Shown: positions 14,289 through 64,000 of the stretch, piece by piece
Numbering within the stretch: the first letter of the stretch is position 1
Layout of the letters: each line of letters begins with the position of its first letter
Source of the DNA: Schmidtea nova
Lineage: Eukaryota
Direction of reading: 5' to 3'
Assembly (NCBI GenBank): GCA_044892505.1
Contig: CM097882.1
Location: forward strand, 247,752,001 to 247,816,000
Length of the DNA: 64,000 bases
The notes under the pieces: model-generated
Database searches by the model: none
Seen by the model: the letters and a program-made list of their open reading frames with translations, nothing else
Told to the model about the DNA's origin: nothing
Translations under genes and position numbers: made by a program

Positions 14289-14429
14289 AAGAAAATTTGA
14301 TGGAAGGGGCAGAAAAGTGGGAGAATGTAGGAAAGGTAAGCGAGAAAATATACAGGTTCCTAAGAAAAGAAATGTTTGAAGAGGAAGTGGAAAGAATTGA
14401 AACCATTGAAACGGAGTAGGCTCTTGAAA

Positions 14430-17312: not shown

Positions 17313-17331
17313 AATTTCTTAAGAAGGGGGA

Positions 17332-38106: not shown

Positions 38107-39509
38107 TGCTGGTGTGTTGGTTAGATTGACAACTGAGATCCTTATGATTTTATACGTTAGGGTGATCTCGCCAACATAAAAACATTCCCCCGCTGACACC
38201 CATGATGTATCCCTAACTACTCATCATGTTGGTACTGTGTCAACGTTGTGAAATGACAAGGCAGGTGAGCAACCTTTCGGCTACTATTCCCTTGTTTATT
38301 CACGGGTCCACCACTACCGATAGAAGGTGTCTGTGGCTTTCTTTCGGTCCCACTTATGCTCTTTACTTTTCTCTAGGGTTGATTCAATGTTATTACATCT
38401 GCGGCTTTAAATGAATCCGAGTTTTAGTTATATTCCATTCTCAGTCATTCCACAAACAAACAAGACAAGTCAAATCATTCATTTTATACATTTATTTGTA
38501 GTTCAACAATACAGAGGGTCGGATTACATTTAGTAGTTCTTGCTCGGATAGACCACGATGTTACGCTTTACCTATCTCGATTCTCATCGACTTTTGATGT
38601 ACCAGCACTCCTTGAAGGTACACCCCCTCGTCAAGATACCTCATGTATATATCTTCCCTTGCGAAATGAGCTTCACCTTGATTTGATTTATGACCATTAA
38701 CTGTCACTCGATACCCTATCATCCTGATGTATAGCGTTTATACTAGACCGCCTCTACTTTGATTTAGTTCATGATCATTAGGTCTTACTCGATACCCTAT
38801 GTGCAGTTAACTCCTTCCGCTTTCCAAATATTTAATACACTTATGGTCCCGCCGCATCAGCACCTCACAACCGAAAGATTGTGTTGCGCTGAGAGGCCCC
38901 AAGAATCCGTCAGGCTGTTAGGCCTCCGGAAAACCTTATGGATTTTAATATGATTAACAATTATAATTATGAGGGTTTAAAAGACTAAAACAACATGAAT
39001 TACCTTTTATTCCTTTTCCAAATTCGTTTCACAATGTTCTCGGTAGTCACAAACAGTTCACACTTGGTAAAGATAACATTGTCAAATACTGATTTGACTT
39101 CAGTATTTATACTGAACCGGTGTTGTTGGTTAGCCAATCAGCATCGAGTATGTGTGTATGTCTGCTTCATTTTTTATGTTGTCGGCTTTTTGCTGCCTAA
39201 CTTAACTCGCCGATTTGTTTGGTTAATCATGCGGTAAGTTTTTCTTAGTCATCAATTTATTTTATTTTATTTTTGTTTTAGGTCTTTGGTGACATCCGCC
39301 CACGCGCTGTCATATTCCAATTTTTCTGCTTCGCATGAGTGAGTTTTGAAGATTTTTGTTGTTTGATTTATATTTTATTTCTTTTAGATGTTGCCGCCTA
39401 TTTTGTTACGCTTTGGTGTTGGTAATTTATTTTGTTGTTATTCTGTATTTAATTTATTTTATTGATTGTATATTATTTTCAGATGCTGCTCGATTTGGCT
39501 GGCCCAACA
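38107..39509 (-). repeat. 3' LTR (1403 bp)
   Basis: Direct repeat of 62402-63804; three short ORF translations inside the two copies are identical. Confidence 0.97.
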
Positions 39510-39530
39510 TCACTCGGGGTCCCCTAAAAT
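39510..39530 (-). promoter_or_regulatory. Candidate polypurine tract region (minus strand TTTTAGGGGACCCCGAGTGA)
   Basis: Position directly before the 3' LTR; only partly purine-rich. Confidence 0.4.
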
Positions 39531-39684
39531 TGCGTCCCGCAATTACATGCATATACCTACATCAACATACATAAAAAGTTCGTGACAGAACTTACATGTA
39601 AAACCACATAAGGTGGTAGCTTTCATACCCATTTATACAAAGTCACACATTGTCATTGTCATGTTTTTATTGTTTATACACAGT

Positions 39685-39906
39685 TCAATGTTTCTGGCTC
39701 ATAGGGGTTGATTTTCCGGTCCTTTCACTGGTTGACTGCATTTCGTATCGGGCTTGAATTTGTCGTAGATGACTTCTCATCCTTTGTTGGGTTTTTGCTT
39801 CTCTTTTGGCGCATCTACACATTATCATTTGCTGTTGTTTGAGGCTTCTGATTCGATATAGGGTATATGTAATCACGATGATCAAGATGATTGTTAATAT
39901 CGTCAT
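39685..39906 (-). CDS. Small 73-aa N-terminal TM protein (accessory ORF)
   Basis: MTILTIILIIVITYTLY followed by a basic tail; co-oriented in the cassette. Confidence 0.55.
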   Translation of the reverse strand: MTILTIILIIVITYTLYRIRSLKQQQMIMCRCAKREAKTQQRMRSHLRQIQARYEMQSTSERTGKSTPMSQKH

Positions 39907-39987
39907 TGTAACTATTTCGACGATGATCCATCTGTTTCGGATTTCGGATTCGATTTGGGTTTGCCCTTTGATTGGCTTTAGCTGATC

Positions 39988-40239
39988 TTAGAATGTTTTA
40001 TGGATTTCTCGGATCTTCTCGATTTGATCGAATAGGGTTTGTAAGGGTTTGCGATGATCATGACTGATTCGCATTTGTCGGGTTAATTGTTTCAAGTCTT
40101 CTCTGACTTCATTTAGTTGTTTTTCGATCTCCTGGAATATTTCGTTTGACAGGGTTCTTTGAATTTCTGTTGTCGAACAGTTCGTGATTGCTGCTGTTAA
40201 CATAATAGTTAGGATTGGTAGGGTTTTGAGCCAGTTCAT
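39988..40239 (-). CDS. Small putative secreted coiled-coil protein (accessory ORF)
   Basis: Likely ATG at MNWLKTLPILTIMLTAAITNC (signal-peptide-like), then a heptad-rich helix. Confidence 0.55.
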   Translation of the reverse strand: MNWLKTLPILTIMLTAAITNCSTTEIQRTLSNEIFQEIEKQLNEVREDLKQLTRQMRISHDHRKPLQTLFDQIEKIREIHKTF

Positions 40240-40313
40240 TTTCTGATTATTCCACTGATTAATACATGTTACATCGATTTGTACATTTTTACACACGGAT
40301 TTTTCGCCTCGTT

Positions 40314-41474
40314 TTACACATCCGTCTCCTCTGGTTCATGAAACCCTTCATCTTGGAGCTCCATTGGTGGTGGTGGTATAAATGGTAACCACACCACTCT
40401 GCTTCTCCACATTGCAATTTCATCTTGGTACGTTCGAGAGATTTGTATCTCTTCATCTAACAGATACTCCATGTAATCTGATTGTTCGCTCAGAGTTTCA
40501 ATTTGTCTTTCCATCTCTTCCACTTTTCTCTTCAGGGCTTCTGTTTCTGTGGGTTCGGTTTCTATTTCTGGGGTTTCTTTCTCTGCTTTCAGGGTTATTA
40601 TCTGCTGTTTCAGTTCTTCGTTTTCTTTAGTCAAATTCGCTATATTTTCCTCATACGCTTGGTTTGATTCCGCATGTCTTTCCTTCACAGCTTTCAGTTC
40701 CATTTTCTTTTGAGTTACTACTCCTTGGTAGCCATTTACATCTCTTTCCAGGCTTTCTTTTTCCTTGATCATCTTTTGTCTTTCCGCTTCCTCTTTCTGT
40801 CTGATACCTCGCATTTCTCCATTTACCATCTGTATTTGCCATTGCGTTTTCTTTAGTTCCTTTGCTTGTTCTCGAATAAATCGCTGTCGTTTTCGACTCC
40901 ATTCTTTGTTTGCTTGTTCTTGTCGCTTTCTCTGTTCCAATTCCTCTTTCAGTTCGTCTATCTCTTGATACAATTTCCAATCTTCGCTGTGTGCTGTCCT
41001 TCTGATTATCTCTTTGGCTTCTTTATATACTCGTTTCGACTCCATCTTCCAATGTCTCGCTTGAGCCTTGATTGCTAGTATTTTTACCTCCATCTTTTCC
41101 TCTTGTTTCTCCCTCTCTTCTCTTCGCGTTTTCATCATATTTTTATAATGTTCTGCTTGTTTCCTCATCAACTGATAGGTCTCTTCTATCTTCTGTCGAC
41201 TTCGTGAATTCGTTCCTTTTAGCTTCTCTATTTGTGCTGTCAGTTGTACTATCTCTTTATTCACTTCCTCGAGTTCTAGTTGATATAACTCCATTCGTCT
41301 CTCGTATTTTAGTTTCTCGTAGAAATTGTTTGTCATCACTTCGTGTAATTCTCTGGTTCTTTGTTCCACTTCCGTTTTACATCTACTTTCGATTTCTCTT
41401 TCTATTGCTTCTCGTTCGTTCGCCATCTCGTTTCTCGTTTCATCTTCGATTACATGTTCATTTGCGTTTTCCAT
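40314..41474 (-). CDS. 386-aa long coiled-coil protein (accessory ORF)
   Basis: E/K/R/Q-rich heptads over ~340 aa; C-terminal WLPFIPPPP motif. Confidence 0.8.
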   Translation of the reverse strand: MENANEHVIEDETRNEMANEREAIEREIESRCKTEVEQRTRELHEVMTNNFYEKLKYERRMELYQLELEEVNKEIVQLTAQIEKLKGTNSRSRQKIEETYQLMRKQAEHYKNMMKTRREEREKQEEKMEVKILAIKAQARHWKMESKRVYKEAKEIIRRTAHSEDWKLYQEIDELKEELEQRKRQEQANKEWSRKRQRFIREQAKELKKTQWQIQMVNGEMRGIRQKEEAERQKMIKEKESLERDVNGYQGVVTQKKMELKAVKERHAESNQAYEENIANLTKENEELKQQIITLKAEKETPEIETEPTETEALKRKVEEMERQIETLSEQSDYMEYLLDEEIQISRTYQDEIAMWRSRVVWLPFIPPPPMELQDEGFHEPEETDV

Positions 41475-41564
41475 TCTGTAATTTACAGATTTACACTTGT
41501 TATACTATACGTTTATTGTTGTCGTCGATTTTTACACTTTATTTACAGGGTCGTTCATTTCTGA

Positions 41565-42977
41565 CTACTCCAACCATCCTTTCGTTGACTTCGTGTTCAT
41601 CACTGTTGTACTTGCTTTCTTCTCGATCTCCAACTCTACATATAAGTTGTCGTTGTACAACATCTCCCACATTGTTTGGTGTGGTATGAATTTTGGTTCT
41701 CCAGTCGCTAATGAACATTCTGTGGTTGGTCTTTTGTAAGCTTCGTGCTTACCATCAATTTTGAATACTCTCGCTATTGTTTCTTTCGAGTTTCTCACTC
41801 TCATTATAGCCTTTGTTTCTAGTGGCCATTCTAATATGTCGTCGTAACCACCTTTACACAACGCAAAGAATAATGACACATGCGTTTCCTTTCCTGATCC
41901 ATCTCCATTTGGATAAATTCTCATTCGAACTTTGTATCCATTTTTCCACAGATAGAATGGTGGACTTGTTACCGACACCTGACTTCCTGCTTTTGCTGCT
42001 GCGAACTTTTCGTTGAAATTCTTAATTTTCCATATATATGGTGCAACAGGTAAACTCTCGATATCCTCTGCATCTCGCACCCACATTTGATGTCGCACGT
42101 TTACTTCTTTTACCAATGTCTCCATGACTTTGATTTTCTCCATCATTTTCTCTCTGGTGAGCTCGAATTGTTCTCTCGTTTCCAGCAATAACTCCGTCAT
42201 TATCCTCTGAGATTCGATTTCTTTTCCCAGCTTCTGTATGGTTTGCTCCATTTCTTCCAAATTTTCTATTAGCATCTCTGCGTGTTGTACCGTTTCGGTT
42301 TCCAAATGCTCTTTCATCTCTTTGCTTGTTTTCTTTACTGCACATCCTTGTTTACTCCATACGCACTTTCTTGGTCTTGATTCGCACTGTTCCCAATGTT
42401 CTCTCACCATCACTTCTTCTCCGGTTCCGCAATTACTTGGACAAATTCCTCGGAATTTTCCGCACACTTTCTCTTCTGCTACGTTGAGATGTTCTGTTTC
42501 GATTACTTCTCTCGTCTCTCTTTGTTCGCAGTATTGACACTCTATTATCTCTGCTTTGCACTCATCCTTGTGATTTCTCGACTGCTTGATGGTTATCGTC
42601 TGTTGACACTTTTCACATGTTGCTTTCTTGTTTTCGCATTTCTCCAGATGTTGTCTGAGTTCGATTATTTGACCTTTCCACTCACATGGTTGGTTTATAC
42701 ATTCTGTTTTTATCTTCCAGATCTCCTTTTGGATTGCTTTGTCTGGTTTCGTCTCGTTGATTAGTAGTTTATCGCCACACTCTGGACACTTTCTTGTCTC
42801 ACTTTCACTGATTATTTGCAATATACACTTGGTGCACATCCTGCATCCACATTCCGTTTGTCTCGGTTTTAACAGTAAATTTTTACACTTTACACACGTC
42901 ACATTTACTCCCCATTGTCGATTCTCTCCTCTTAGAATCTCGATTGTTTGGTAGTCTGCTTCGCTTTCTGTTCTCAT
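41565..42977 (-). CDS. TRAF-family protein (RING, TRAF zinc fingers, coiled coil, MATH)
   Basis: RING CVKC...CGCRMCTKC...CPEC; zinc finger CINQPCEWKG...HLEKC; MATH YIWKIKNF, SPPFY, GYKVRMRIYPNGDG, HVSLFFALCKGGYDDILEWP. Confidence 0.93.
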   Translation of the reverse strand: MRTESEADYQTIEILRGENRQWGVNVTCVKCKNLLLKPRQTECGCRMCTKCILQIISESETRKCPECGDKLLINETKPDKAIQKEIWKIKTECINQPCEWKGQIIELRQHLEKCENKKATCEKCQQTITIKQSRNHKDECKAEIIECQYCEQRETREVIETEHLNVAEEKVCGKFRGICPSNCGTGEEVMVREHWEQCESRPRKCVWSKQGCAVKKTSKEMKEHLETETVQHAEMLIENLEEMEQTIQKLGKEIESQRIMTELLLETREQFELTREKMMEKIKVMETLVKEVNVRHQMWVRDAEDIESLPVAPYIWKIKNFNEKFAAAKAGSQVSVTSPPFYLWKNGYKVRMRIYPNGDGSGKETHVSLFFALCKGGYDDILEWPLETKAIMRVRNSKETIARVFKIDGKHEAYKRPTTECSLATGEPKFIPHQTMWEMLYNDNLYVELEIEKKASTTVMNTKSTKGWLE

Positions 42978-43068
42978 TCTACAACAATATTTACATCAAT
43001 TTCCCCATATTTTTGATTTTTTCTGGTTCTTTATTTACACGTATTTACACAATTTTTCCGCTTATTCA

Positions 43069-43419
43069 TTATACATCCTCAGTTGAATCTGGCTCTGGAT
43101 ACACGTCTATCTCATTTACAATCCAGCTCGTCCAACTATCCGGTATCTCTTCCTCTTCATGTCTCGTTAATCGGTCAATCTCCTCTGCTTGCCAGTTGTT
43201 CACTTCATTCAATGTTCGATTCTCGTTCTGTAATTCGTTTATCTGTATTTGTTGGATCTCAATTTTGTTCATTGCTTCGAAATTACAGTTGTAACTCTCG
43301 GTTAATAATTGCGTTTTGGCCGTCAACTGGCTCTGTAATTCATTTACTGTTCTGGCTAGCAGGTCGCATTGTACTTTCCATCTCGTCATCATTGACATCT
43401 CGATATTTTCTTGGTTCAT
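43069..43419 (-). CDS. 116-aa coiled-coil protein with acidic tail (accessory ORF)
   Basis: Open frame, co-oriented, heptad pattern. Confidence 0.6.
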   Translation of the reverse strand: MNQENIEMSMMTRWKVQCDLLARTVNELQSQLTAKTQLLTESYNCNFEAMNKIEIQQIQINELQNENRTLNEVNNWQAEEIDRLTRHEEEEIPDSWTSWIVNEIDVYPEPDSTEDV

Positions 43420-43544
43420 CGTTTTTTTCTAGATTATATACATCATTCTCTTTTTTCTGTTTTTCTGTTTTATAATATTTATACCCATACGTATACGGTT
43501 ATGCATTGGTTTTTACACTATTATTTACACTCATATTCCACCCT

Positions 43545-46500
43545 CTATACAACTATCACTGGTTTTCCTTCGTACAGTTCCTCGTCCTCGATCTGTACCC
43601 ACATTTCTTCGTGTTTTGATCGTCTTTTCAGCTCTTCTCGTACTTCTTTTGGTAGTTTTATGTTGTAATTCGTGACCTTTACGTCCGGCCATTTTACTGC
43701 TATGGTCTTATTTCTCATGCCATATCTCCAACATACTATCATGATCGTTATCAGTGGGATACACGCTATGAATACTCCCATGCTGATTAAACCCATTATT
43801 GTTTTCCCGATGTTCATTCTTGGAGTTTCACTTTGGTTTATCATCACGCCATATTGACCTTTCCATTCCGCTTCCCATTGTTCATATTGTTGTTGTCTCC
43901 GTCTGACTTCTTCAATCACTTTCTCTGGTTCCCATCTTTCTTGGCGGTTTGGTATTGTTTCTTCCTTCTCGTTTTGTTCTCTCTTCTGACTCAATTCTCG
44001 GAATTCTAACTTTCTGATTCTCCTCTTTATCGGCGTGTAATAGGTTTCGCACCTTTCTTGTGGATTTCCTTGTGTATCCACTTCTTCAATTGCACACACT
44101 TCGTATTCTGCGTTTGTTTTCAACTTCCTCATTTCTACCTCAATAATTTCTCCTTTGTCATCTGCGGTCTTTTGACATCTTCGTGGAGACTTTCCCATAC
44201 TGTTTGGCATTAATGTCCAACAGATTTCTAGGACCTTTTTATGGATCTTCCATATTATCAACGTTGTTGATTCCGATTCGTGTTCTATTGTCGTGCTTTC
44301 TGTGGTTGCCTGTTGAGTTCCTTGACTGTTTGTTGTCGTGGTTCTTTTTGACTTTCTTTTCCTCTGTCGACTTCCTCCCATTTCAATCGTTCTTGTTCCG
44401 TTAATTTGCTCTGGCGTCTTGTACAGTTTGCACTCCAGGCTTCTTAGTATTATTTCTCTTATTCTTCGAATTACGCAAATTTCGTAGGTTTGTCCGACTT
44501 CGAATCCATTTAGTTGAAACGGGATTCCTCGTTCTCTCGTTCTACATTGCGGTATTATGTTGTTGGTCGATACTCCGATGTATTTTCTCCAACACATCCC
44601 AATTGTTCTCCGACCAATGTTTTTTATCTCCACGGTTACTACTTCATTCGCAATCGTTTCTTGATCTTGTTTCTTTCTTTTTGGGAACTCAATTATCTCC
44701 TTTGCTTGGAACACTTTACACTCGCTTGTTCCTGGTCTGTTTCCGTTTGCTGCTTTTCCCATGAGACATAGTTCACATTTTCTATCTGTCTCCATTTCGG
44801 TTATCTCAATTTCTTCATTTGTCTCTGCTTCTCGACTTTCTCTTGTTTCGCTGATTCCAATTACTTCATTGTTTCGTCCCCAACATCTTCCATTCGTTGT
44901 TCGTTGGTCTTGGATATTTACTAACGTCATCACGCTGATATCTATGTCCTCCATGATTCTCTTAATGAGAATTAATATTAATGCTACACATATCAATTCT
45001 GGTTGGAATGTTAATTTGCCCGCTGAATTTTTGGTTATTCTTTCTTTCTCTGTTCGGTTTCTGATTCCCTCTTCTGCTTCCGTTTGATTCTTCCCTTTCT
45101 CTGGTTCTACTTCTGTTCTTCTCGTTGTCTCTTCGCTTCTTTTCTCAATCCATTTCTGTATTTTCAGCGCTTCTGTTGCTTTATATAATTGACATGCAGT
45201 TACTTGAGGTGCTTTTGGTTCTCCTCTCTGCTTTATTGCGCATATTATGTATGACTTTTCTTTCTCCAACCCTTTGATTTGGATGACGTCTCGCTTCAAA
45301 TCTGACAATATACACTTCAGCGTATCGTTTTTCTTCAGATTTTCTTTCCAGCATATTCTTTCGTATACTTCATTTCCTCTGATTATTTCCAGCGTGACGT
45401 ATTGTTTCTTGGCTTCTCCTTGTCCGATGATTGTTATCAATATCGCTATACACAACATTTCTGGTCTCAAAAGTAGACTTCCTGTTCGTTTTCCATGGTT
45501 CGCACATTCGTCTTTTGTTCCACTGTTTTCTCGTTCTTCTGCTTCTCTTTTCTTGTCGTTTCTCGTTGGCTTTGGTTCTTCTTGTCTTTCTTTTTCATCA
45601 TCTTCCGTTCTTTTGTTGTCATTGTCTTCTTTGTTCTTTTCGTTGTTACTTTTGTCGTCGAAATCTCTGTAACCACCCCCTGGTCCTTTGAAAATGTCGT
45701 CCTCGACATTAATTTCTTTAATCAATCTTTCATACGCTTGAACCGCGAGTGTGCTAGACTCGAATTCTCGTATTTCCATCTCTTTGGATGGTTCTATGTT
45801 TTCTAGTCTACTTTGCTTGATTGTTTCTTTGGCTTTTGCCCATTCATTCACATATTTTCTGAACAAGTCTTTCCATCTTCCCATTCGTTCCTGTTCCTTT
45901 GGGTTGTTCGTAAGTTTCAAATCTCTTCTCTTCAAGAATTCTTCTACTATCTCTGGCTTTTTGTGTCTTAATAACGCGCTTCTGATACACCAATTCTGGT
46001 TCTGTTCCATATGATCATTGATCTTGAACGCTGGTTCCTTAGTGACCGGATTCACCCATGTTAGTAATGCTCTTGTTTTCTCTATGTCGTGTATCATTAC
46101 TGTTAGACTGAAATTCTTTACGTTATTTGCCAGATATTCGATGTCATCCTGTTTCTTGATGGACTTTATGAACTTGATCATCTCGAAGTTGTTCCACTGT
46201 ATTGCGATATCTATGATGGAATTGTTCTTTCCATTTTTCCCTTCGATTTTTGCTCCTGCTTCGTATAATTCATTTAGCACTTTCAACTTCGTCTTCTTTC
46301 TTGCTGCGATTATCATGATTGTATCTCCGTTATCGTCAACCGTATTCATGTCTGCTTCGCACTTGACCATTGCTTTCGTTATTTCTAGCACTTCGTTTTC
46401 TTTCTTTCGGCGTAATGCCCAGTGTATCGGCAATCTCCCATCCTTTGATAATAGGAATGCCACTGGCATTTGATTTTTGATCGTTTCTATGTCGATCTCG

Positions 46501-52500: not shown

Positions 52501-55500
52501 TTATTATTCACATACAAGTGTAGCTTGATATCCATTGTGTCGATCTTGGGTTTCGCATTCGGTACTTCTTGCTTTGACACATATATTCCTGGATAGTTTG
52601 TTTCGTATACTGTTGTACTGCACTTAAGGGTTGCTTTCCCTTTTATGAATCTCATGCCCACATCCTGATTTGTGGTTATCAACACTGTTGGTGTGGTTCT
52701 CATCTCTATCCGTTTTTCTCTATGATCGGGTTTCAATTGTCTTTTATTCTCTAAAGCTTCTTTGAGATGTTTTGCTCTAGCTTTGTCGTCATCGTCTTCT
52801 TCTTGGAACGTTTTGCCTTGAATTTCGTCAAACTTTGCTCCTTGTAGCAGTTGTAATTGACATTCGTTCACTTTTGGTTTATACACCAAAGTTGACATTC
52901 CCGTTTGACACATGCTTCTGTCAATTTTACACATGGATAACGTTTTCATTTCTCCTGTTGTTGGTTCGAAGAATGCTTCGTAGCTTTTCAGTTCGACTAT
53001 ATACGTATCCATTACCACTAAGTTGGTTGCAGGTACTCCAAATATTGGGTAGGTTTCTCCTTGACAATATCCTTCTCCTCCCGTAATTCGTCCTGCTACG
53101 TAATATGTCTGCTGTAACATCATTCCTGGCTTTCCTCTTATCTTGATTTTATCTCTCGTTGTCACTTCTCCATGTTTAAACAATGCTTCGCAGTCTTCTC
53201 CCTGTAACACGATTGGTTCTCTTTCTGTTCCTGGCATGACAATTGCTGAGTAATGTCCTCTACCGCAATAGAATGCGAATCTCGTCTTCTGTACCTTGCA
53301 TTCATTCACCATTGTCTTTATTAGTTCTGCCTCTTGATATACGTGGTACCATTGTTCCTTTTTTATCTCTTTTAACTCTACGGGAGTTGCATCTTTGCAC
53401 TGCTCCGTACCTCTCAATGAGTACTTCTCTCCCAACTTCATTTGATCACAGTCAAATACTTCAAATGTTGTTACACCTTCTGTGCTTAACAACCAAACTA
53501 GCATCATCATGATTATCGAGTTTAGATTCAACGTCGATCTTCCGTTTCCTTGCATCGTTTGTCTATTCTCCATTTCTCTCAATACTCCTTCGAGTTTCTT
53601 TCTCATCACGTTAGAACCTTCTTTTGTCTGGTTCTCTTTTATGAACTTTTCCCATCCTCCTTTTCTGAGGATATATGGTTCAATTTCCTTCTCGATAATC
53701 ATCGCCGTATTTTTAATATGTCTTCCCATCGGACTTGACTTCGGACTTCCTCGGCTTAGCGTTAGCAAATTGTATATCGTATACGAGATTGCTACTAGAT
53801 ATTTGCTATCCGTCTCTGCTCCGTTAAGTAGCCTTTTTATCAACATCGTGGTTCCTTGCCAATCTAGATGATTCGATTTTGTTTTTGCCTTTATCAATTC
53901 TGGCATAATCGGTGCTATTGCATTGTGTAGCATTCTTGCCTTTGTACTGGGTTCGTTTATCCGCCACAAATTCTTTAATTCTGGGTCAATTATCGCTAAC
54001 ACATCCATTATCGTTTTGGTGAGCCATTCTTCTCCTTGACAAACTTGATTCTCCTCTTTTCCTCTGATCTCTGCGATTTTATCCAATTTCTTCAAGCAAA
54101 TCTCCCATTGCTCTTGTCTCCTTTCTTCCCTTGTCTTTGGGATTGCTGTTGCTGGATCTATCTTTGGTCTTCCTCTTGGTCGTTTTTCCATTCCAGTTCC
54201 TGTTTCTACAAATCTCGATGTTCTTCCGGTTTCTTCCGTAACATCTCTTCCTTCGTTTGCTCGTTGTTCTAACCATCTTTCCATTTCTTGAGTAAACTGT
54301 GGTTGTTCTTGCTCGTCTTCCGAATCGCTTACCATTTCTATGACTACCTCCTGTTCCACTCCTTGATCGTCGATTTCTGCTGGTGACGTTATTGGCATCT
54401 CTATTATTCTGTCGAAAATATTCGCCGTTGGTTTTTGAGTCAACTTCGTTAGTTCTTCTATCGCCTCATCACTATCTGTTAGTATCTCATCCACGTCATA
54501 CGCTTCTGGTGGTGTTCTCTCTCTCGTTTTTATTGGTGTTGTCCTTGCTTGTCCCGAACTTGTTCCTGGGGTCATTGTTGACTTCATCGGACTTGGTGTA
54601 CTCATGCTCCCTTTCGTTTTCTTTTCCTCTTTAAACTTCAGTGGTTGACCCACTATCTGTGCCACTGTTAGCGTATTCATTAGATCCAATTGCACTGGTG
54701 TCAGCCAGATTTCCAAATTATTATCCAACGATCGTCCTTGATGTTGCAGGTGGAATGGTAGTTCGTACATCAGTTTCTCTTTAACACTCTTCACTTTTTC
54801 TGTTAGCATCACCCAAAACTCTTCTTTTCTCTGATTCGGATACATTATCCTCAAATGTATTTTCTGTGGCGTTTCCTCCGCAAACTCTTTGTTTCTCCAC
54901 TTTTTTATTACATCGTCTAGTTGCTCTGGACACCACTCGTTAACTCTCTTGTATTCTGCTATCGCTTTAGCTACTTTTCTCAAGTTTGTCATGTCTTCTC
55001 CATTTGAGATTATGAATTGTGCTAAGCCTTTTATTGTTTGTCTTTTTCCCCGAGTATTCCCTCTCAACAGTTCGATCAATTCACTCGTTTTCTGTTTCTC
55101 CAATTCTGCCCATATTACTGCAGTTTCTGGTCCGTCTAAGTCCGTTGGTAATAACTTCCTTGTTACCATACATATCCGTTTCGTATTCCGTTCATATCTG
55201 TCTTCTCCTTCCGGATCTTCTTCATACACGCCTCTTTTCACTTTCCAACATTTCTCTTTGTTATCCCATTGTTTCTCTACTGGCGTCAATCGTCGTCTGT
55301 TAAGATCCACTTCTCCTAATATTGTCTCCCATTCTGGCTTCATCTGCCAGTTCCGATAGATTTCTACTATTTGTCTCAACTTACGCATAACGTCCTCTTG
55401 TCGTTTCTTTCTCCTTTCTTCATCCCTTGGTGTTGCTCTTTGCACATCATCCATTCTGATGACATGTATTGTCTGATAATTATCCCATATGCCGATTTTG

Positions 55501-58412: not shown

Positions 58413-59279
58413 CCCGATTCCACTATCTTGGAATACTGTACTAGTTTTCTTTGCTTCTAGTTCACCACTTGTTTCTGGATTCGACTCTTCTTCTTCACTA
58501 CTCTCTGTTTCGTTATCTCTTGATTCGCTTCTTGTTCTGTTTTCCCTGACTAGTTCACTGTCTATCGTCTCTACTTCGTTTCGTACTTCTAGATCTTCTG
58601 GGGTTTCTTCTTGGTTCTCTTTATTACTCGAATTATCGCTGATCTCTACTTGTTTGTTCTTTTGTTGCTTAGGCTTGTTACCTGTTCTTGTCCTTTTTGC
58701 TGCTTTTCTTTCTGCTTCCGTTAAGATTGGTATTATACCTGATCTTGTTTCTCGTCCCTCAATTTTGTCTATTCCTCAACTTCTTATATTCTCAATTGAT
58801 TTTCTACTCCGCTTTTGCTTTGCTTCTTCTATGCTTTGTTTCCTTTGATTGCTCTGACTGCTAGATTGCTTTGAATTGCTTGATTGATTTGTTTCCTTAA
58901 AACAAATAATCACTTACACGATACGTCCCCGTTATCGTGTTTCTCGTCCCTCTCACGGGTGTAGTCATAATTCATGAAGATCCCCATTTTTCCCATTTCC
59001 CTTGATTTTAAGTCTATTTAAATTATCTATGCAGTCGCATCAATTATCTATTCTTTATCAAATACACCAATTACTTTTCCCCAGTTTCCCAATTACTTTG
59101 TCGCTCAGCGCTCTTATTATCCCCTTTACTTTTCTCAGGCTTCTCTGGCTCTGAGTTCAAATTTCCCCTTATCTGTCGACTACTCTGTTTCTCGACTACT
59201 CACTTTATCTCCTATTCACACTACGTTTACTACTTCATTTCAATTCTCATCTCTACTCACCTTTAATTCAACTGACATT

Positions 59280-59760
59280 TCTCATTGGCCTGCTGGGTTT
59301 TCCAGTCAGCGCCTTTAATCTCACCTTTTATCTCGAACTCTGTTTCTCTCCATTTCACTCATTATCTCATTAGCCTGCTGGGTTTTCCAGTCAGCGCTTT
59401 TAATCTCTCCCTTTTACTGTTATCTCTTTATTCTCGACCACGACTGTCGTTTCATTAGCCTGCTGGGTTTTCCAGTCAGCGCTCTTATTATCCTCCATTT
59501 ATCTCTTTACTGTCGACTTTTAACTGCTCTTTACTCCGATGATCATCACTTTTGACCTGCTGGGTCTTCCAGTCAGCGTCCTCAATTTCACCACTTTATT
59601 GTTACTCCCTTTTATTCTCTCGATCTTTCCTGATCGTTTCCATTGACCTGCTGGGTTTTTCCAGCTAGCGTCTTTACCCCTTTACCTGTCTTAACAAACC
59701 GGTTTCTTTTTATTCCCCTCGAATCTCATGGTCTGCTGGGTTTTCCAGTCAGCACCCTCC
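59280..59760. repeat. Six spaced copies of CTGCTGGGTTTTCCAGTCAGC in the 5' leader
   Basis: Copies at ~59290, 59375, 59459, 59557, 59648 and 59733, spacing ~85-100 bp, with variable spacers. Confidence 0.85.
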
Positions 59761-60072
59761 ACTTACTCACTTTACTTTACTACTCCTCTTTGTATGCATA
59801 CTTTAACATCATTAGGCCACATAATCAGCTTTACTCGCATTTATCAATACCCAGGTGCGCACCTTCAACTCTCACATTATTACCTCGGTTTCTTTCAACC
59901 CTTATTCCTCATTATTCGCTATTCATTTTCACTATTCATCATTTATCCTCATTATCATTTATTCATCGCTTATTAATCTTCATTATCCGGATAGTTTTAT
60001 ACTTTATTTAGTCCTCATCTGCCTCACTTCGTCGTCTTTCTCGTGGGCTTTTACTCAATATTTTATTTCGAA

Positions 60073-60623
60073 CGAGAACTATGCTCACTGCTGAGAACTA
60101 TGCTCACTAACGAGAACTATGCTCAATGACGAGAACTATGCTCAATGACGAGAACTATGCTCACTGACGAGAACTATGCTCACTGACGAGAACTATGCTC
60201 ACTGACGAGAACTATGCTCAATGACGAGAACTATGCTCACTAACGAGAACTATGCTCACTGACGAGAACTATGCTCAATGACGAGAACTATGCTCACTAA
60301 CGAGAACTATGCTCACTGGCAAAACATGGTTGTTATGAGGGTTTTGCTTACTGATGGAAACTCTTTGCCCTGGGGACTATGTTCCCCGATGAGAACTACG
60401 CTCACTGATGGTGACTACAGGAATTATGTTTCCTGATGAGAACTACGCTCACTACGATGGCTATGTTTATTGATGAGAACTACGCTCACTGATGAGGACT
60501 ATGTTCGCTGGTCTTGTGTTTATTAATGAGAACTCTGCTCACTACGAGAACTATGCTCACTACGAGAACTATGCTCACTATGATGTTGTGTTTTTATGAC
60601 GAGACCTATGCTCACTAGGATGT

Positions 60624-60656
<33 letters not shown>

Positions 60657-60690
60657 GAGACCTATGCTCACTATGAGACCTATGCTCACG
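60073..60690. repeat. 19-bp tandem array (CGAGAACTATGCTCACTGA), ~13 copies to 60319, then degenerate copies
   Basis: Directly visible tandem repeat without spacers. Confidence 0.92.
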
Positions 60691-61388
60691 AACGAAAACT
60701 CGAAATATCATCTCTCAGTGGTTGCATGTGTTGCTTCGGGATGTTCCTCCCAGTGGTCACTTATGCTTCTTCGGAGAATCTATTGTCGCGTTTCGTTAAG
60801 TTCTGTCTTTCAAGAACTATGGGCAAATCCTTTCTCTCTAGGACCCCTTTTATTATTTCCTTTCTTTCAAGGATTTCCTTTAACCTCGAGTTTTCCATTG
60901 ACTCGGTTCATCTGTTATACCCCCTTATTCTATTATCGATTCGTCAACCTTTCTACTTGATTTTACCTTATGCGAGCTGATTACGTGCCTTTCATCATAT
61001 ACCACATTTTCTCTATTCATCTTACTCATTTCATTGCTTTATCTCTCTCTTTACTGATCAGTTTATCATCCTATTTTTATAGTTTTTCTGCGCGCGCCTA
61101 CACCTCATTAAGTTGTTCCTACCTTTCACCCCAACCAAAATATATAAAAAGATCGCATTGGTCCACTGATGCACGATGTGGTGATCAGTCACATCACAAG
61201 AGCTTTCCAATATCCGCGATTGGCCCCTTTCTACACATCTCGGGTAAGTTGATCAGTTGGTTCCCCCCAATGGGTGCTTATCGGACTACTCGTGAGTAGC
61301 TCATAATTACTTAGGTCATTTTTACCAAATCATTTTTAAACCCTCATAATTTCAATAACAACTGCACTTGCTCAAAACTTTATTTCTA

Positions 61389-61847
61389 TTACAAGTACAC
61401 TGTTATTTTCTCGGATACGGGAAGGTTGCACATAGGACATCGTTCATTTATTTTACACTCATTACAGAATCGAAAATGCCCACACGGCAACAACATTATC
61501 TGTATTTTGTTTATTTCACAGATATAACACGTCAGATATTGTCTCGTATGTTCTGTTGTTATTCTTATCCACTCATCGTGTTTTGTTGTTAACTGTTGTT
61601 CTAGCCTGTGGCACTCGATATTCATTTCGGGGTTGTTTAATCTTTCTCTGTACCATTTATATCTCGTTGCTGTATCCACTGTGTTCCTATTCTCGCTTAT
61701 GCTCATTATCATTTCGGCTCTCTCTGTGTTGTTTGTCGGTTCGTGGTATCCTTCTACCTCGAGTCGTCTTAACTTCCTCATTATTGTCTCCACTGTTTCG
61801 TTGTTTGTTTCGAAAAACGTTTGCATTTCTTTTATTTTGTTCTCCAT
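61389..61847 (-). CDS. 152-aa protein with C-terminal IAP-type C3HC4 RING finger (putative E3 ligase), upstream of gag
   Basis: CYICEINKIQIMLLPCGHFRFCNECKINERCPMCNLPVSEKITVYL matches the XIAP/cIAP-type RING spacing and terminal hydrophobic tail. Confidence 0.85.
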   Translation of the reverse strand: MENKIKEMQTFFETNNETVETIMRKLRRLEVEGYHEPTNNTERAEMIMSISENRNTVDTATRYKWYRERLNNPEMNIECHRLEQQLTTKHDEWIRITTEHTRQYLTCYICEINKIQIMLLPCGHFRFCNECKINERCPMCNLPVSEKITVYL

Positions 61848-62377
61848 CCCCTGAATGAATTACCGTTAATTTCTGTCGATCTTTATTTATTATTTATTAT
61901 TTCTATTCTATGGTAGCCCTACTGTTCGGTTTTTGTTGTTCTATTTCGCGCCACTGCGTATCCCCCCGTGTTCTTGAATGTCGCCCCGACATGATCATTG
62001 TTAGTTACTCACACTCATACCATTTTCATGCACACTTTTCCGCATACTTTTACCTTACGTCATGCATACTTTTCATCACTTTTCATACTGTTATTCCACA
62101 TACTATTCATCATACTTCATTCGTTCTCATACTTCCATTCCATTATCCTTCATACTTTCATTCTCATGCATACTTTCATCACGTTCATCAATCTCATTAT
62201 TTTACACTCATACTTTTATTTATTATTTTTCAACCCGATTCATTCTTGCTTCAGGACCCTCAAACCCTCTGTCATTCTTTACTTTACTTTTCCTCGCTAA
62301 ATTCAATTCATCCCGGTTCAGGCGCTCTAAACTGTCCGCAGATATCGAATTCACTTTTTCCCACAAAGATCGATTTA

Positions 62378-62395
62378 ATCCCGGCTGAGCCCCCA
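62378..62395 (-). promoter_or_regulatory. Primer binding site, tRNA-Pro type
   Basis: Minus strand TGGGGGCTCAGCCGGGAT, 16/18 to the MuLV tRNA-Pro PBS TGGGGGCTCGTCCGGGAT, 6 nt from the LTR end. Confidence 0.85.
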
Positions 62396-62401
62396 AATTT
62401 A

Positions 62402-63804
62402 TGCTGGTGTGTTGGTTAGATTGACAACTGAGATCCTTATGATTTTATACGTTAGGGTGATCTCGCCAACATAAAAACATTCCCCCGCTGACACCCATGA
62501 TGTATCCCTAACTACTCATCATGTTGGTACTGTGTCAACGTTGTGAAATGACAAGGCAGGTGAGCAACCTTTCGGCTACTATTCCCTTGTTTATTCACGG
62601 GTCCACCACTACCGATAGAAGGTGTCTGTGGCTTTCTTTCGGTCCCACTTATGCTCTTTACTTTTCTCTAGGGTTGATTCAATGTTATTACATCTGCGGC
62701 TTTAAATGAATCCGAGTTTTAGTTATATTCCATTCTCAGTCATTCCACAAACAAACAAGACAAGTCAAATCATTCATTTTATACATTTATTTGTAGTTCA
62801 ACAATACAGAGGGTCGGATTACATTTAGTAGTTCTTGCTCGGATAGACCACGATGTTACGCTTTACCTATCTCGATTCTCATCGACTTTTGATGTACCAG
62901 CACTCCTTGAAGGTACACCCCCTCGTCAAGATACCTCATGTATATATCTTCCCTTGCGAAATGAGCTTCACCTTGATTTGATTTATGACCATTAACTGTC
63001 ACTCGATACCCTATCATCCTGATGTATAGCGTTTATACTAGACCGCCTCTACTTTGATTTAGTTCATGATCATTAGGTCTTACTCGATACCCTATGTGCA
63101 GTTAACTCCTTCCGCTTTCCAAATATTTAATACACTTATGGTCCCGCCGCATCAGCACCTCACAACCGAAAGATTGTGTTGCGCTGAGAGGCCCCAAGAA
63201 TCCGTCAGGCTGTTAGGCCTCCGGAAAACCTTATGGATTTTAATATGATTAACAATTATAATTATGAGGGTTTAAAAGACTAAAACAACATGAATTACCT
63301 TTTATTCCTTTTCCAAATTCGTTTCACAATGTTCTCGGTAGTCACAAACAGTTCACACTTGGTAAAGATAACATTGTCAAATACTGATTTGACTTCAGTA
63401 TTTATACTGAACCGGTGTTGTTGGTTAGCCAATCAGCATCGAGTATGTGTGTATGTCTGCTTCATTTTTTATGTTGTCGGCTTTTTGCTGCCTAACTTAA
63501 CTCGCCGATTTGTTTGGTTAATCATGCGGTAAGTTTTTCTTAGTCATCAATTTATTTTATTTTATTTTTGTTTTAGGTCTTTGGTGACATCCGCCCACGC
63601 GCTGTCATATTCCAATTTTTCTGCTTCGCATGAGTGAGTTTTGAAGATTTTTGTTGTTTGATTTATATTTTATTTCTTTTAGATGTTGCCGCCTATTTTG
63701 TTACGCTTTGGTGTTGGTAATTTATTTTGTTGTTATTCTGTATTTAATTTATTTTATTGATTGTATATTATTTTCAGATGCTGCTCGATTTGGCTGGCCC
63801 AACA
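62402..63804 (-). repeat. 5' LTR (1403 bp)
   Basis: Direct repeat of 38107-39509; TG...CA termini. Confidence 0.97.
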
Positions 63805-64000
63805 TCAATATCATATTTTTCCATGCATCGTCTATTCCCAAGTCTTCTCGATGTGCAACGCAGTGCTGCTCGGACAAATGAGGGACCTCGGCACGAAGCA
63901 AAGCAGCTACTCCATTTCGCTTGCCAAGCATCACTGACGCTCCATCCGAAGTGAACATGACCATCTTCTGCAAATCAAGATTGTTTTCAATGTAGAACTG
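63805..64000 (-). pseudogene. 5' continuation of the interrupted hAT transposase
   Basis: FTSDGASVMLG...QHCVAHREDLGIDDAWKNMIL joins MMDIELLLRT (~38100) once the LTR element and one TSD copy are removed. Confidence 0.85.

What the first reader, a model, noticed from the sequence alone, without database searches (positions are those of the whole stretch)
38107..63804. Giant intact retrovirus-like Gypsy element combining an envelope with an apoptosis/immune-signalling toolkit
Seen: 25.7 kb, matching 1403-bp LTRs, TSD, PBS, an unbroken 4955-aa ORF and six further co-oriented ORFs. Motif reading gives a fusogen plus TRAF, IAP-type RING, Bcl-2-like, ankyrin, Ubl-like and FN3-like modules. Known: such modules are typical host-manipulation genes of large DNA viruses, not of retrotransposons. 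From memory, >30 kb Gypsy elements (Burro) were described in the planarian Schmidtea mediterranea, and this may be a relative, so novelty must be checked. Inference: an infectious or cell-to-cell-spreading complex retroelement that suppresses death or innate signalling in host cells.
Basis: partly seen in the sequence, partly recalled or inferred. Interest (0 to 1): 0.96.

Follow-up and report, generated by a model that had tools for sequence, protein, structure and literature searches.

The report
Intact giant Burro-like Gypsy provirus
This is an unbroken, very recently inserted 25.7-kb copy of the giant "Burro"-type Gypsy endogenous retrovirus known from planarian flatworms; it carries a viral fusion glycoprotein inside its polyprotein plus TRAF, IAP-type RING and ankyrin genes, which is striking biology, but the architecture and the host-manipulation idea are already published.

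Summary
The anatomy is real, on the minus strand. Two 1403-bp LTRs (38107-39509, 62402-63804) are 100% identical, with TG..CA ends, a TCAA target duplication and a TGG-initiated primer-binding site. A 4955-aa ORF is unbroken and six co-oriented ORFs accompany it.

The giant ORF reads gag (three CCHC knuckles), 1.3 kaa of orphan sequence, a class III fusion glycoprotein (Pfam PF24664, E 3e-70), PR, RT, RNase H, IN, ankyrin repeats and 870 aa of orphan sequence. Pol is closest to yeast Ty3.

Bcl-2-like, Ubl-like and FN3-like were not confirmed by any search, and the AlphaFold models were unusable.

Arkhipova & Yushenova 2019 (PMC6431247) already describe planarian Burro elements with this layout and the same host-tampering hypothesis. 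GAG-ENV-POL order in flatworm Gypsy elements is also published (PMC13524379).

This copy differs from Burro1 in that TRAF is a separate 3' ORF rather than an in-frame MATH domain. I also found a signal-like segment and a membrane anchor bracketing env, conserved in five distant relatives.

Verdict: ordinary for this known family. Infectivity and immune or death suppression remain untested inference.

The parts
38103..38106 (.). Target-site duplication TCAA (3' side of the element)
   Evidence: Same 4 bases at 63805-63808, directly abutting both LTR ends.
38107..39509 (-). 3' LTR, 1403 bp, TG..CA
   Evidence: 100% identical to 62402-63804.
39510..39526 (-). Putative polypurine-tract region just upstream of the 3' LTR (short purine run only)
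   Evidence: Read from the sequence. Weak, and assigned by position.
39685..39906 (-). ORF of 73 aa with an N-terminal hydrophobic segment; coding status doubtful
   Evidence: Hydrophobic 19-mer at aa 1-19. Codon-usage support is weak. No Pfam family.
39988..40296 (-). ORF of 102 aa (first Met at aa 20), unknown, coiled-coil-like
   Evidence: Codon usage like the giant ORF. Only sub-threshold Pfam hits. First Met.
40314..41474 (-). ORF of 386 aa, orphan, unknown function
   Evidence: Codon usage like the giant ORF. No Pfam or PDB relative.
41565..42977 (-). Accessory gene encoding a complete TRAF (470 aa): RING with eight Cys ligands, 4-5 TRAF-type zinc fingers and a MATH/TRAF-C domain
   Evidence: Pfam MATH_2 E 2.5e-27, zf-TRAF and TRAF3_RING. 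PDB best hits are TRAF5/3/1/2 MATH at E 1e-25 to 1e-27. Ligand pattern. Nearest database proteins are only 24-30% identical.
43069..43419 (-). ORF of 116 aa, unknown, coiled-coil-like
   Evidence: Codon usage like the giant ORF. Only sub-threshold Pfam hits.
43545..58412 (-). Giant unbroken gag-env-pol-cargo ORF, 4955 aa
   Evidence: PR D[ST]G and RT YxDD motifs are each present once in the expected domain.
57453..58412 (-). Gag part (aa 1-320), including three CCHC zinc knuckles at aa 240-290
   Evidence: zf-CCHC in Pfam. Three knuckle patterns. aa 17-319 align to the N-termini of five relatives.
53526..57452 (-). Orphan, highly charged region between gag and env (aa 321-1629)
   Evidence: No Pfam or PDB hit. 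One relative among 1.84 billion proteins: P0006, 31-33% identical over about 600 aa. The AF2 model was unusable.
51543..53525 (-). In-frame env (aa 1630-2290): class III viral fusion glycoprotein with a signal-like hydrophobic start (aa 1633-1643) and a membrane anchor (aa 2214-2232)
   Evidence: PF24664 Monjiviricetes_fusion E 2.9e-70, profile positions 4-579 of 653. Hydrophobic segments are conserved in all five relatives. 12 invariant Cys.
50856..51128 (-). Aspartic protease (aa 2429-2519)
   Evidence: Pfam RVP E 1.3e-8. D[ST]G at aa 2443.
49716..50192 (-). Reverse transcriptase (aa 2741-2899)
   Evidence: Pfam RVT_1 E 8.6e-36. Ty3 RT is the best PDB hit.
49140..49529 (-). RNase H (aa 2962-3091)
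   Evidence: Pfam RT_RNaseH E 7.7e-38.
48246..48815 (-). Integrase (aa 3200-3389): H2C2 zinc domain plus catalytic core
   Evidence: Pfam Integrase_H2C2 E 1.1e-20 and rve E 3.3e-11.
46164..47456 (-). Ankyrin-repeat region after IN (aa 3653-4083)
   Evidence: Pfam Ank_2 E 9.4e-18, with Ank, Ank_3/4/5 at aa 3653-3694 and 3997-4083.
43548..46163 (-). Orphan C-terminal region (aa 4084-4955) with hydrophobic segments at about aa 4311, 4465-4492 and 4875-4893
   Evidence: No Pfam or PDB hit. Hydrophobic segments. All five relatives also have a near-C-terminal hydrophobic segment. The AF2 model was unusable.
58413..62376 (-). Leader of about 4 kb between the PBS and the gag ATG, holding the RING ORF and tandem arrays (19-bp x13 and relatives at 60034-60654; 85-bp x2.4 at 59280-59487)
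   Evidence: There are 93 ATG triplets over the 3989 nt from the 5' LTR end to the gag ATG.
61389..61847 (-). Accessory ORF of 152 aa upstream of gag: coiled-coil-like N-terminus plus an IAP-type C-terminal C3HC4 RING; no BIR domain
   Evidence: Pfam zf-C3HC4_3 E 4.6e-9. PDB best hits are the cIAP2, cIAP1, ML-IAP and XIAP RINGs. Full C3HC4 pattern at aa 107-140. Codon usage.
62377..62395 (-). Primer-binding site: 19 nt starting TGG, 6 nt downstream of the 5' LTR
   Evidence: Read from the sequence. That it resembles a tRNA 3' end is my reading; no tRNA gene in the window allows a comparison.
62402..63804 (-). 5' LTR, 1403 bp
63805..63808 (.). Target-site duplication TCAA (5' side)

Best explanation
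This is a full-length, very young and apparently coding-intact copy of a Burro-type giant Ty3/Gypsy endogenous retrovirus, in an AT-rich genome that is most likely a dugesiid planarian such as Schmidtea.

Shown:
- LTR/PBS/TSD anatomy of an LTR retroelement.
- One 4955-aa ORF reading gag, orphan region, class III env, PR, RT, RNase H, IN, ankyrin, orphan tail.
- A RING-only IAP-like ORF in a 4-kb leader.
- Five tightly packed 3' ORFs, including a complete TRAF.

Inferred mechanism:
1. The genomic RNA is reverse-transcribed from a tRNA primer and integrated with a 4-bp duplication.
2. The polyprotein is threaded through the ER membrane. A conserved internal signal-like segment starts env and a conserved anchor ends it. 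The env ectodomain is therefore luminal, while gag and pol stay cytosolic, much as in flavivirus-type polyproteins. Signal peptidase and the element's protease would then release the parts. A spliced env mRNA starting at the Met cluster at aa 1635-1637 is the alternative.
3. The leader holds 93 ATGs, so gag translation probably needs splicing or internal entry. The 3' ORFs probably need subgenomic mRNAs, as in complex retroviruses.
4. The TRAF, IAP-type RING and ankyrin products plausibly act as decoys or E3 ligases on host TRAF/ubiquitin signalling and keep the producing cell alive or unresponsive. This last step is the published Burro hypothesis and is untested.
For: - Anatomy.
- Domains.
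- Coding status of the accessory ORFs: in-frame codon usage and 86% coding density.
- Env under constraint: PF24664 E 3e-70; 35-42% identity to seven relatives with 12 invariant Cys.
- Env topology: the signal-like 11-mer (KD 2.5-3.2) and the anchor are conserved in all five long relatives, whereas a Met at that point is absent in three of five.
- Family: five metagenome polyproteins of 3700-4029 aa share the gag-env-pol order. The protein P0006 matches the orphan mid-region over about 600 aa and has a MATH domain in frame, as published for Burro1.
- Literature: PMC6431247 describes a 4873-aa Burro ORF1 with three CCHC knuckles, in-frame env with mononegavirus hits, MATH_TRAF_C, BIR, BCL2-like, Ubl, ankyrin, tandem repeats, and accessory ORFs that alternate with polyprotein subdomains. 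PMC13524379 reports GAG-ENV-POL with class III env in Platyhelminthes. BURRO1 is transcribed and PIWI-controlled (PMC8532177).
- Host: flank A+T is 70%, matching the >70% A/T reported for S. mediterranea.
Against: - No Burro reference sequence was available, so identity to Burro1-4 was not measured. The species is inferred only from composition and family.
- This copy lacks four features reported for Burro1: in-frame MATH, BIR, a BCL2-like motif and a dUTPase-like motif.
- At 25.7 kb it is shorter than the '>30 kb' quoted for Burro.
- No second copy was available, so selection on the accessory ORFs (dN/dS) could not be measured.
- No expression, particle or splice data exist for this copy.
- Identical LTRs could in principle be an assembly or polishing effect.
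- The membrane-threading model rests on hydropathy alone.
Confidence: 0.85

Rival explanations
1. The element belongs to the Burro kind but is an undescribed lineage or species variant, not Burro1-4 as published. It has moved the TRAF module out of the polyprotein into a full-length 3' gene, and it keeps only the RING of an IAP.
For: - The only database relative of the cargo region (P0006) is just 31-33% identical. It carries MATH in frame exactly where this element has about 27 residues.
- The two MATH domains are 32% identical, no closer to each other than to vertebrate TRAFs.
- No exact copy of the TRAF or of the giant protein is on record in the assembly collection.
- The ORF1 length of 4955 aa matches neither 4873 aa (Burro1) nor 5140 aa (D. 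tigrina).
Against: - Burro-2, -3 and -4 and the curated S. mediterranea repeat library were not available for comparison, and they may include exactly this element.
- A TRAF encoded by a separate accessory ORF is already reported for the D. tigrina element.
Confidence: 0.3
2. The element is a purely intracellular retrotransposon. Env and the cargo genes are passengers or relics with no role in cell-to-cell spread or host manipulation.
For: - No particle, expression or infectivity evidence exists for this copy.
- Three of the seven claimed modules were not found.
- About 45% of the giant ORF is orphan sequence of unknown fold.
- RNAi of BURRO1 and RT inhibitors did not change the smedwi-2 phenotype (PMC8532177).
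Against: - Env keeps all 12 cysteines shared with relatives at 35-42% identity, together with its signal-like start and its anchor.
- All zinc ligands of the TRAF and of the RING are present.
- There is no stop in 14.9 kb, and the accessory ORFs show coding-type codon usage. Such preservation is not expected of neutral passengers, although a copy with identical LTRs has had no time to decay.
Confidence: 0.2
3. The element is an artefact or composite: host TRAF and RING genes trapped between two LTRs by recombination or mis-assembly, not one element.
For: - Captured-looking cellular genes lie at both ends of the internal region.
- The window contains several N gaps elsewhere.
Against: - Identical LTRs with a matching 4-bp TSD mark one insertion event.
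- No N lies inside the element.
- All ORFs are co-oriented, intron-free, tightly spaced (17-125 nt) and share the element's A-rich, roughly 39-40% G+C composition against about 30% in the flank.
- A relative carries MATH fused in frame to the same orphan region.
- The published family has the same cargo.
Confidence: 0.03

Closest known systems
Burro1 / GYPSM1 of Schmidtea mediterranea (Grohme et al. 2018; Jurka 2007; described in PMC6431247)
   Same: - Giant Gypsy element with a single ORF1 of about 4.9 kaa.
- Gag with three CCHC knuckles.
- Env in frame between gag and pol, with mononegavirus-type glycoprotein hits.
- PR-RT-RH-IN followed by ankyrin repeats.
- TRAF/MATH and RING cargo, tandem repeats and accessory ORFs.
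- AT-rich host genome.
   Different: - Here MATH is not in ORF1; a complete TRAF is a separate 3' ORF.
- No BIR, BCL2-like, Ubl or dUTPase-like motif was detectable by Pfam.
- Total length is 25.7 kb, against the >30 kb quoted.
- The one available relative of the cargo region is only 31-33% identical.
Burro-like element of Dugesia (Girardia) tigrina (PMC6431247)
   Same: ORF1 lacks MATH_TRAF_C, which sits in a separate accessory ORF. It has the same gag-env-pol layout.
   Different: That element has two CCHC knuckles, a 5140-aa ORF1 and an upstream TRAF ORF. Here there are three knuckles, 4955 aa, and the TRAF ORF lies downstream of ORF1.
GAG-ENV-POL Ty3/gypsy 'errantiviruses' of Platyhelminthes, Nematoda and Bryozoa with class III env (Chary & Hayashi 2026, PMC13524379)
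   Same: Gypsy pol, a class III fusogen placed between gag and pol, and multiple intact copies reported.
   Different: The passages I read mention neither the gigantism nor the TRAF/RING/ankyrin cargo. Their env is labelled HSV/gB-type, whereas here Pfam assigns the Monjiviricetes fusion family.
Metagenome relatives found here (P0001-P0005; loci L001, L002, L003)
   Same: Single gag-env-pol ORFs of 3400-4029 aa; 38% (env) and 43% (pol) identity; conserved signal-like and anchor segments; downstream accessory ORFs.
   Different: Their cargo is a DEDD/RNase_T-like exonuclease ORF, not TRAF, RING or ankyrin. They carry extra protease-like copies. No LTRs are visible on the contigs.
Mosquito BEL/Pao elements with a captured chuvirus glycoprotein (Dezordi et al. 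2020, PMC7642597)
   Same: An LTR retroelement that acquired a Monjiviricetes-type glycoprotein as its env.
   Different: Per the introduction of PMC13524379 these are BEL/Pao elements, not Ty3/Gypsy. From my own knowledge, not checked here, env is a separate ORF, the size is ordinary, and there is no signalling cargo.
Complex retroviruses and large DNA viruses with vIAP, ankyrin or TRAF-binding genes
   Same: Accessory genes aimed at ubiquitin, death or TRAF pathways. Foamy-like fish ERVs also grew through accessory ORFs (PMC6431247).
   Different: This is a functional analogy only. No homology to any viral IAP, Bcl-2 or ankyrin gene was shown here.

Membership tests
Ty3/Gypsy (Metaviridae) LTR retroelements | Pol order PR-RT-RNase H-IN, with RT/IN closest to Ty3/Gypsy | tested here: met
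   Pfam domain order. Best solved relative is Ty3 Gag-Pol 7q5b at E 1.9e-114, ahead of caulimovirus, foamy virus and MLV.
Ty3/Gypsy (Metaviridae) LTR retroelements | LTRs with TG..CA ends, short TSD, PBS next to the 5' LTR | tested here: met
   1403-bp identical LTRs, TCAA TSD and a TGG-initiated 19-nt PBS. The PPT is weak.
Burro giant Gypsy elements of planarians | Single giant ORF1 (about 4.9-5.1 kaa) with gag, in-frame env and pol | tested here: met
   4955-aa ORF with CCHC, then PF24664, then PR-RT-RH-IN, against the description in PMC6431247.
Burro giant Gypsy elements of planarians | Gag with three CCHC knuckles (S. mediterranea type) | tested here: met
   Three CX2CX4HX4C patterns at aa 240-290.
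Burro giant Gypsy elements of planarians | Ankyrin repeats and TRAF/MATH cargo | tested here: met
   Ank_2 E 9e-18 after IN. MATH E 2.5e-27, but in a separate 3' ORF rather than in ORF1.
Burro giant Gypsy elements of planarians | MATH_TRAF_C inside ORF1 (Burro1 layout) | tested here: not met
   No MATH in the 4955-aa ORF. The relative P0006 has it where this ORF has about 27 residues. The separate-ORF layout is the one reported for D. tigrina.
Burro giant Gypsy elements of planarians | BIR, BCL2-like, Ubi2/SUMO-like and dUTPase-like motifs | tested here: not met
   None detected by Pfam at E up to 1-10 on the pieces, nor by PDB sequence or profile search. The published calls used HHpred, which is more sensitive and was not available here. 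The AF2 models were unusable.
Burro giant Gypsy elements of planarians | Total length above 30 kb | tested here: not met
   25,698 bp in total, with a 22.9-kb internal region. The published internal region is 'up to 25 kb'.
Burro giant Gypsy elements of planarians | Sequence identity to, or RT/IN clade with, reference Burro1-4/GYPSM1; dugesiid host | not testable with these tools
   No reference sequence or planarian genome is held. Indirect evidence only: 70% A+T in the flank, and P0006 as the sole relative of the orphan region.
Class III viral fusion glycoproteins (Monjiviricetes type, PF24664) | Profile match above the curated cut-off over most of the ectodomain | tested here: met
   237.5 bits against a cut-off of 27, covering profile positions 4-579 of 653.
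Class III viral fusion glycoproteins (Monjiviricetes type, PF24664) | N-terminal signal, C-terminal membrane anchor, conserved disulfide cysteines | tested here: met
   Hydrophobic 11-mer at aa 1633 and 19-mer at aa 2214, both conserved in five relatives. 12 invariant Cys.
Class III viral fusion glycoproteins (Monjiviricetes type, PF24664) | Class III fold (trimer, bipartite fusion loops) | not tested
No PDB sequence hit.
TRAF proteins | N-terminal RING, TRAF zinc fingers and C-terminal MATH/TRAF-C | tested here: met
   All three found by Pfam. Eight Cys RING ligands and 4-5 CCHC fingers. The MATH domain is closest to TRAF1/2/3/5.
IAP (BIR-containing) proteins | At least one BIR domain | tested here: not met
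   The 152-aa ORF has only the C-terminal RING of IAP type. No BIR was found anywhere in the element.
Bcl-2 family | Bcl-2 profile match or Bcl-2 helical-bundle fold | tested here: inconclusive
   No Pfam or PDB hit. A low-confidence, all-helical stretch lies at about aa 1428-1616, just upstream of env, where Burro's BCL2-like motif is reported. With pLDDT near 35 it proves nothing.

The most novel reading that the evidence does not exclude
This copy may represent an undescribed Burro lineage, which would document modular shuffling of host-derived signalling genes. TRAF would be either an in-frame polyprotein domain or a full-length 3' gene, and an IAP would be reduced to its RING in the leader.

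The whole gag-env-pol family, planarian and non-planarian, may also express its fusogen from inside the polyprotein. It would do so through a conserved internal signal sequence and a stop-transfer anchor, a membrane-threaded polyprotein strategy not described for retroelements.
Probability: 0.3. Interest if true: 0.5.

Novelty: already known. Interest (0 to 1): 0.3.

Why it matters
Burro-type elements are among the largest retroelements known. They blur the line between a transposon and a complex enveloped retrovirus.

An unbroken copy with identical LTRs is a useful reference locus for descriptive work: transcript maps, peptide evidence and comparison between copies.

Two practical points follow.

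1. Element-borne TRAF and RING genes, present in many copies, may inflate the "TRAF expansion" reported for planarian transcriptomes (PMC6109357). They should be separated from host genes in immune-gene censuses.
2. The conserved signal and anchor segments around env give a testable, purely descriptive prediction of how an in-frame fusogen reaches the membrane.

None of this overturns what is published.

Tried and rejected
1. **AlphaFold2 on the two orphan regions.** I ran single-sequence predictions of aa 433-1632 and aa 3756-4955. Mean pLDDT was 35 and 32, and even the known ankyrin repeats were not modelled. I ran no Foldseek search, because the matches would be meaningless.
2. **Looking for depth to build alignments.**
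   - A scan of 1.84 billion representatives with aa 301-1500 gave one hit.
   - Word-based searches gave 5, 4 and 2 hits.
   - One JGI metagenome scan gave one new locus.
   - IMG/VR gave none.
3. **Bcl-2, Ubl, FN3, BIR and dUTPase modules.**
   - Pfam on whole proteins and pieces at E up to 10.
   - PDB phmmer at E up to 5.
   - A two-sequence profile against PDB, which returned only TRAF hits.
   - A self-BLAST for internal repeats, which found none.
4. **Similarity of the post-IN tails among relatives.** BLAST plus a local profile of the five relatives' tails, used only for a score, found nothing significant.
5. **Species identification.** Exact-protein look-ups of the TRAF, the giant ORF and a flank ORF were all not on record. 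Rfam and tRNA scans were empty. No supplement with Burro primers or sequences is held.
6. **The A29 run in the leader as the poly(A) tail of a captured mRNA.** I rejected this, because the run sits inside the tandem array, with the same repeat unit on both sides and no poly(A) signal upstream.

The alignment tool printed consensus lines by itself.

Full report
**1. Observation**

The element lies on the minus strand.

- An exact direct repeat links 38106-39512 to 62401-63807. Trimmed to TG..CA ends, this gives two 1403-bp LTRs, 38107-39509 and 62402-63804, with no mismatch. They are flanked by the same four bases, TCAA (38103-38106 and 63805-63808).
- Six bases inside the 5' LTR, a 19-nt G+C-rich stretch begins with TGG (62377-62395). 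That is the place and form expected of a tRNA primer-binding site.
- The purine run before the 3' LTR is short.
- No assembly gap lies inside the element.
- Its composition is about 39-40% G+C and strongly A-rich on the coding strand. This sets it apart from a flank of about 30% G+C.
- ORF 43545-58412(-) has 4955 codons and no stop.
One lies in the leader (152 aa). Five are packed into the 4 kb between the giant ORF and the 3' LTR (116, 470, 386, 102 and 73 aa), with gaps of only 17-125 nt.
- In shuffles of that 3' region the longest open run averaged 85 codons, against 476 observed. Five of the six ORFs read, in their own frame, like the giant ORF's codon usage; the 73-aa ORF barely does.

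**2. What the giant ORF encodes**

Pfam on the whole ORF and on pieces, with motif counts, gives this order:

| Residues (aa) | Content | Evidence |
|---|---|---|
| 1-320 | gag, with three CCHC knuckles at 240-290 | Pfam, |
| 321-1629 | charged orphan region | no hit |
| 1630-2290 | viral fusion glycoprotein, PF24664 Monjiviricetes_fusion | E 2.9e-70, profile 4-579 of 653 |
| 2429-2519 | protease | one D[ST]G |
| 2741-2899 | reverse transcriptase | one YxDD |
| 2962-3091 | RNase H | Pfam |
| 3200-3389 | integrase | Pfam |
| 3653-4083 | ankyrin repeats | Pfam |
| 4084-4955 | orphan tail with three hydrophobic segments | |

Pol's best solved relative is yeast Ty3 Gag-Pol (E 1.9e-114). It ranks ahead of caulimovirus, foamy-virus and gammaretrovirus enzymes. 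The element is therefore a Ty3/Gypsy element.

**3. Accessory genes**

- **470-aa ORF.** This is a complete TRAF. It has a RING with all eight zinc ligands (the fourth is Cys rather than His), four to five CCHC TRAF fingers and a MATH/TRAF-C domain. Its closest solved relatives are TRAF5/3/1/2. The nearest database proteins are only 24-30% identical.
- **152-aa ORF in the leader.** This ends in a full C3HC4 RING. Its best solved relatives are the C-terminal RINGs of cIAP2, cIAP1, ML-IAP and XIAP. There is no BIR domain here or anywhere else in the element.
- **386-, 116- and 102-aa ORFs.** These are orphans with only sub-threshold coiled-coil-type hits.

**4. Modules that could not be confirmed**

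Bcl-2-like, Ubl-like and FN3-like modules gave nothing significant in any of these tests:

- Pfam at lax thresholds.
- PDB sequence searches.
- A PDB profile search.
- A scan of 1.84 billion proteins with aa 301-1500, which found a single relative.

The only trace is an RA_2 (beta-grasp) hit at E 0.13 near aa 907-940.

Single-sequence AlphaFold2 models of aa 433-1632 and aa 3756-4955 had mean pLDDT 35 and 32. I therefore ran no fold search. Their secondary-structure strings show a few beta-beta-alpha units, and an all-helical stretch at about aa 1428-1616 just before env. That is where Burro's BCL2-like motif is published, but at this confidence it is a lead and not evidence. The dUTPase-like motif reported between PR and RT in Burro was also not detected.

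**5. Relatives**

- Five polyproteins of 3700-4029 aa from ENA and JGI metagenome contigs share gag (about 25% identity), env (37-38%) and pol (42-44%) in the same order. They share nothing of the two orphan regions.
- Three of their contigs (L001-L003) carry downstream ORFs with a weak to moderate RNase_T (DEDD exonuclease) signature instead of TRAF, RING or ankyrin. They show no LTRs.
- Two shorter env-only proteins were also found. IMG/VR gave none.
- Env keeps 12 invariant cysteines across these sequences.
- In the window element and in all five long relatives, env starts with a strongly hydrophobic 11-mer and ends with a membrane-anchor-grade 19-mer. A methionine at the start is present in only two of the five relatives.
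- All of them also have a hydrophobic segment close to the polyprotein's C-terminus.

**6. The one relative of the orphan mid-region**

P0006 (UniParc UPI00060E6093, 882 aa) aligns at 31-33% identity to about aa 555-1156. It carries a MATH domain in frame at the point where the window element has only about 27 residues. Its MATH is 32% identical to that of the 470-aa TRAF, no closer than vertebrate TRAFs are.

The same kind of cargo therefore sits inside the polyprotein in one lineage and in a separate gene in another. The two are either old or independent acquisitions.

**7. How it most likely works**

Shown: an LTR retroelement with every replication domain intact, an env under evident constraint, and accessory genes with intact ligand sets.

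Inferred:

- **(a) Env delivery.** The conserved signal-like segment and anchor suggest that the polyprotein is threaded through the ER membrane. The env ectodomain would be luminal, with gag and pol cytosolic, and would be released by signal peptidase and the element's protease. A spliced env mRNA using the Met cluster at aa 1635-1637 is the alternative.
- **(b) Leader.** The leader is 3989 nt and holds 93 ATG triplets and the RING ORF. Cap-dependent scanning to gag is unlikely without splicing or internal entry.
- **(c) 3' ORFs.** These need subgenomic or reinitiating expression.
- **(d) Cargo function.** TRAF, IAP-type RING and ankyrin products plausibly interfere with host TRAF/ubiquitin signalling. 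This is by analogy with established roles of these domains, and nothing here tests it.

**8. Comparison with what is known**

- Arkhipova & Yushenova 2019 (PMC6431247) summarise Burro (Grohme et al. 2018; GYPSM1, Jurka 2007). These are giant planarian Gypsy elements in thousands of copies. ORF1 has 4873 aa, with gag carrying three CCHC knuckles, MATH_TRAF_C, a Ubl, a BCL2-like motif, env in frame between gag and pol (with hits to mononegavirus glycoproteins), PR, a dUTPase-like motif, RT, RH and IN, together with BIR and ankyrin motifs, tandem repeats and accessory ORFs.
- In D. tigrina the TRAF domain sits in a separate ORF.
- The authors already propose that these are integrated proviruses "meddling" with apoptosis and ubiquitination.
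- Chary & Hayashi 2026 (PMC13524379) report the GAG-ENV-POL order with class III env in flatworm, nematode and bryozoan Gypsy elements.
- BURRO1 is transcribed, intestine-enriched and held down by SMEDWI-2 (PMC8532177).
- S. mediterranea is more than 70% A/T (PMC11410931), as is the flank here.

The window element therefore fits the family on layout, knuckle number, env position, ankyrin and TRAF cargo. It departs from Burro1 in four ways: the placement of TRAF, the absence of detectable BIR, BCL2, Ubl and dUTPase motifs, its size, and its divergence from the only available relative of the cargo region. I could not compare it with the Burro reference sequences, so its subfamily and host species remain unassigned.

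**9. Verdict**

- **Observation:** confirmed.
- **Interpretation:** partly supported. Four of seven modules are verified and the Burro kinship is right. The functional inference is untested and already published.
- **Novelty:** already known as a kind. There is about a 30% chance that this is an uncatalogued lineage.

My own additions are modest: the conserved signal/anchor bracket of env across six divergent elements, the TRAF relocation documented against P0006, and the lineage-specific cargo (exonuclease-like ORFs in the metagenome relatives).

Noticed in passing
window 13029-17569 (+): A second, ordinary-sized Gypsy element. Its LTR-like direct repeats (13029-13242 and 17356-17569) are 93% identical. 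Gag (CCHC), RT and RNase H-IN are spread over at least three separate ORFs, so pol is broken at least twice. It lies about 0.7 kb upstream of an N gap.
   Followed up: partly
window 18210-23206: A large inverted-repeat structure. Its arms reach 626 nt at 99% complementarity and are built from tandem units of about 152 bp. It is bounded by N runs (18308-18707, 22685-23107). It may be a foldback-type element or an assembly feature.
   Followed up: no
window 28517-30451 (-): A 644-aa ORF in a slightly G+C-richer patch. It has no Pfam family and no exact record in the assembly collection, so its nature is unknown.
   Followed up: partly
window 60034-60654 and 59280-59487: Tandem arrays in the element's leader: 19 bp x13, related 18/37-bp units, and 85 bp x2.4. 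A run of 29 A (element strand) is embedded in the arrays, with the same repeat unit on both sides and no poly(A) signal upstream. Published Burro maps also show tandem repeats.
   Followed up: partly
L001 13798-16390; L002 12169-13473; L003 10617-12107: The metagenome relatives of the element carry downstream ORFs with an RNase_T/DEDD exonuclease signature (E 1e-3 to 3e-6) instead of TRAF, RING or ankyrin. Their polyproteins also contain extra protease-like copies.
   Followed up: partly
window 43734-43790 (aa 4875-4893 of the giant ORF) and the C-termini of P0001-P0005: All six polyproteins have a strongly hydrophobic segment 60-110 residues from the C-terminus, although the tails show no sequence similarity. 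This may be a conserved membrane anchoring of the post-integrase region.
   Followed up: partly
window 42777-42896 (aa 28-67 of the 470-aa TRAF): The TRAF RING has Cys at the fourth ligand position where RINGs usually have His, giving a C4C4-type pattern. All eight ligands are present.
   Followed up: no
window 4918-12230: Many long (TA)n microsatellites lie in the AT-rich flank. No tRNA gene and no Rfam family was found anywhere in the 64 kb.
   Followed up: no
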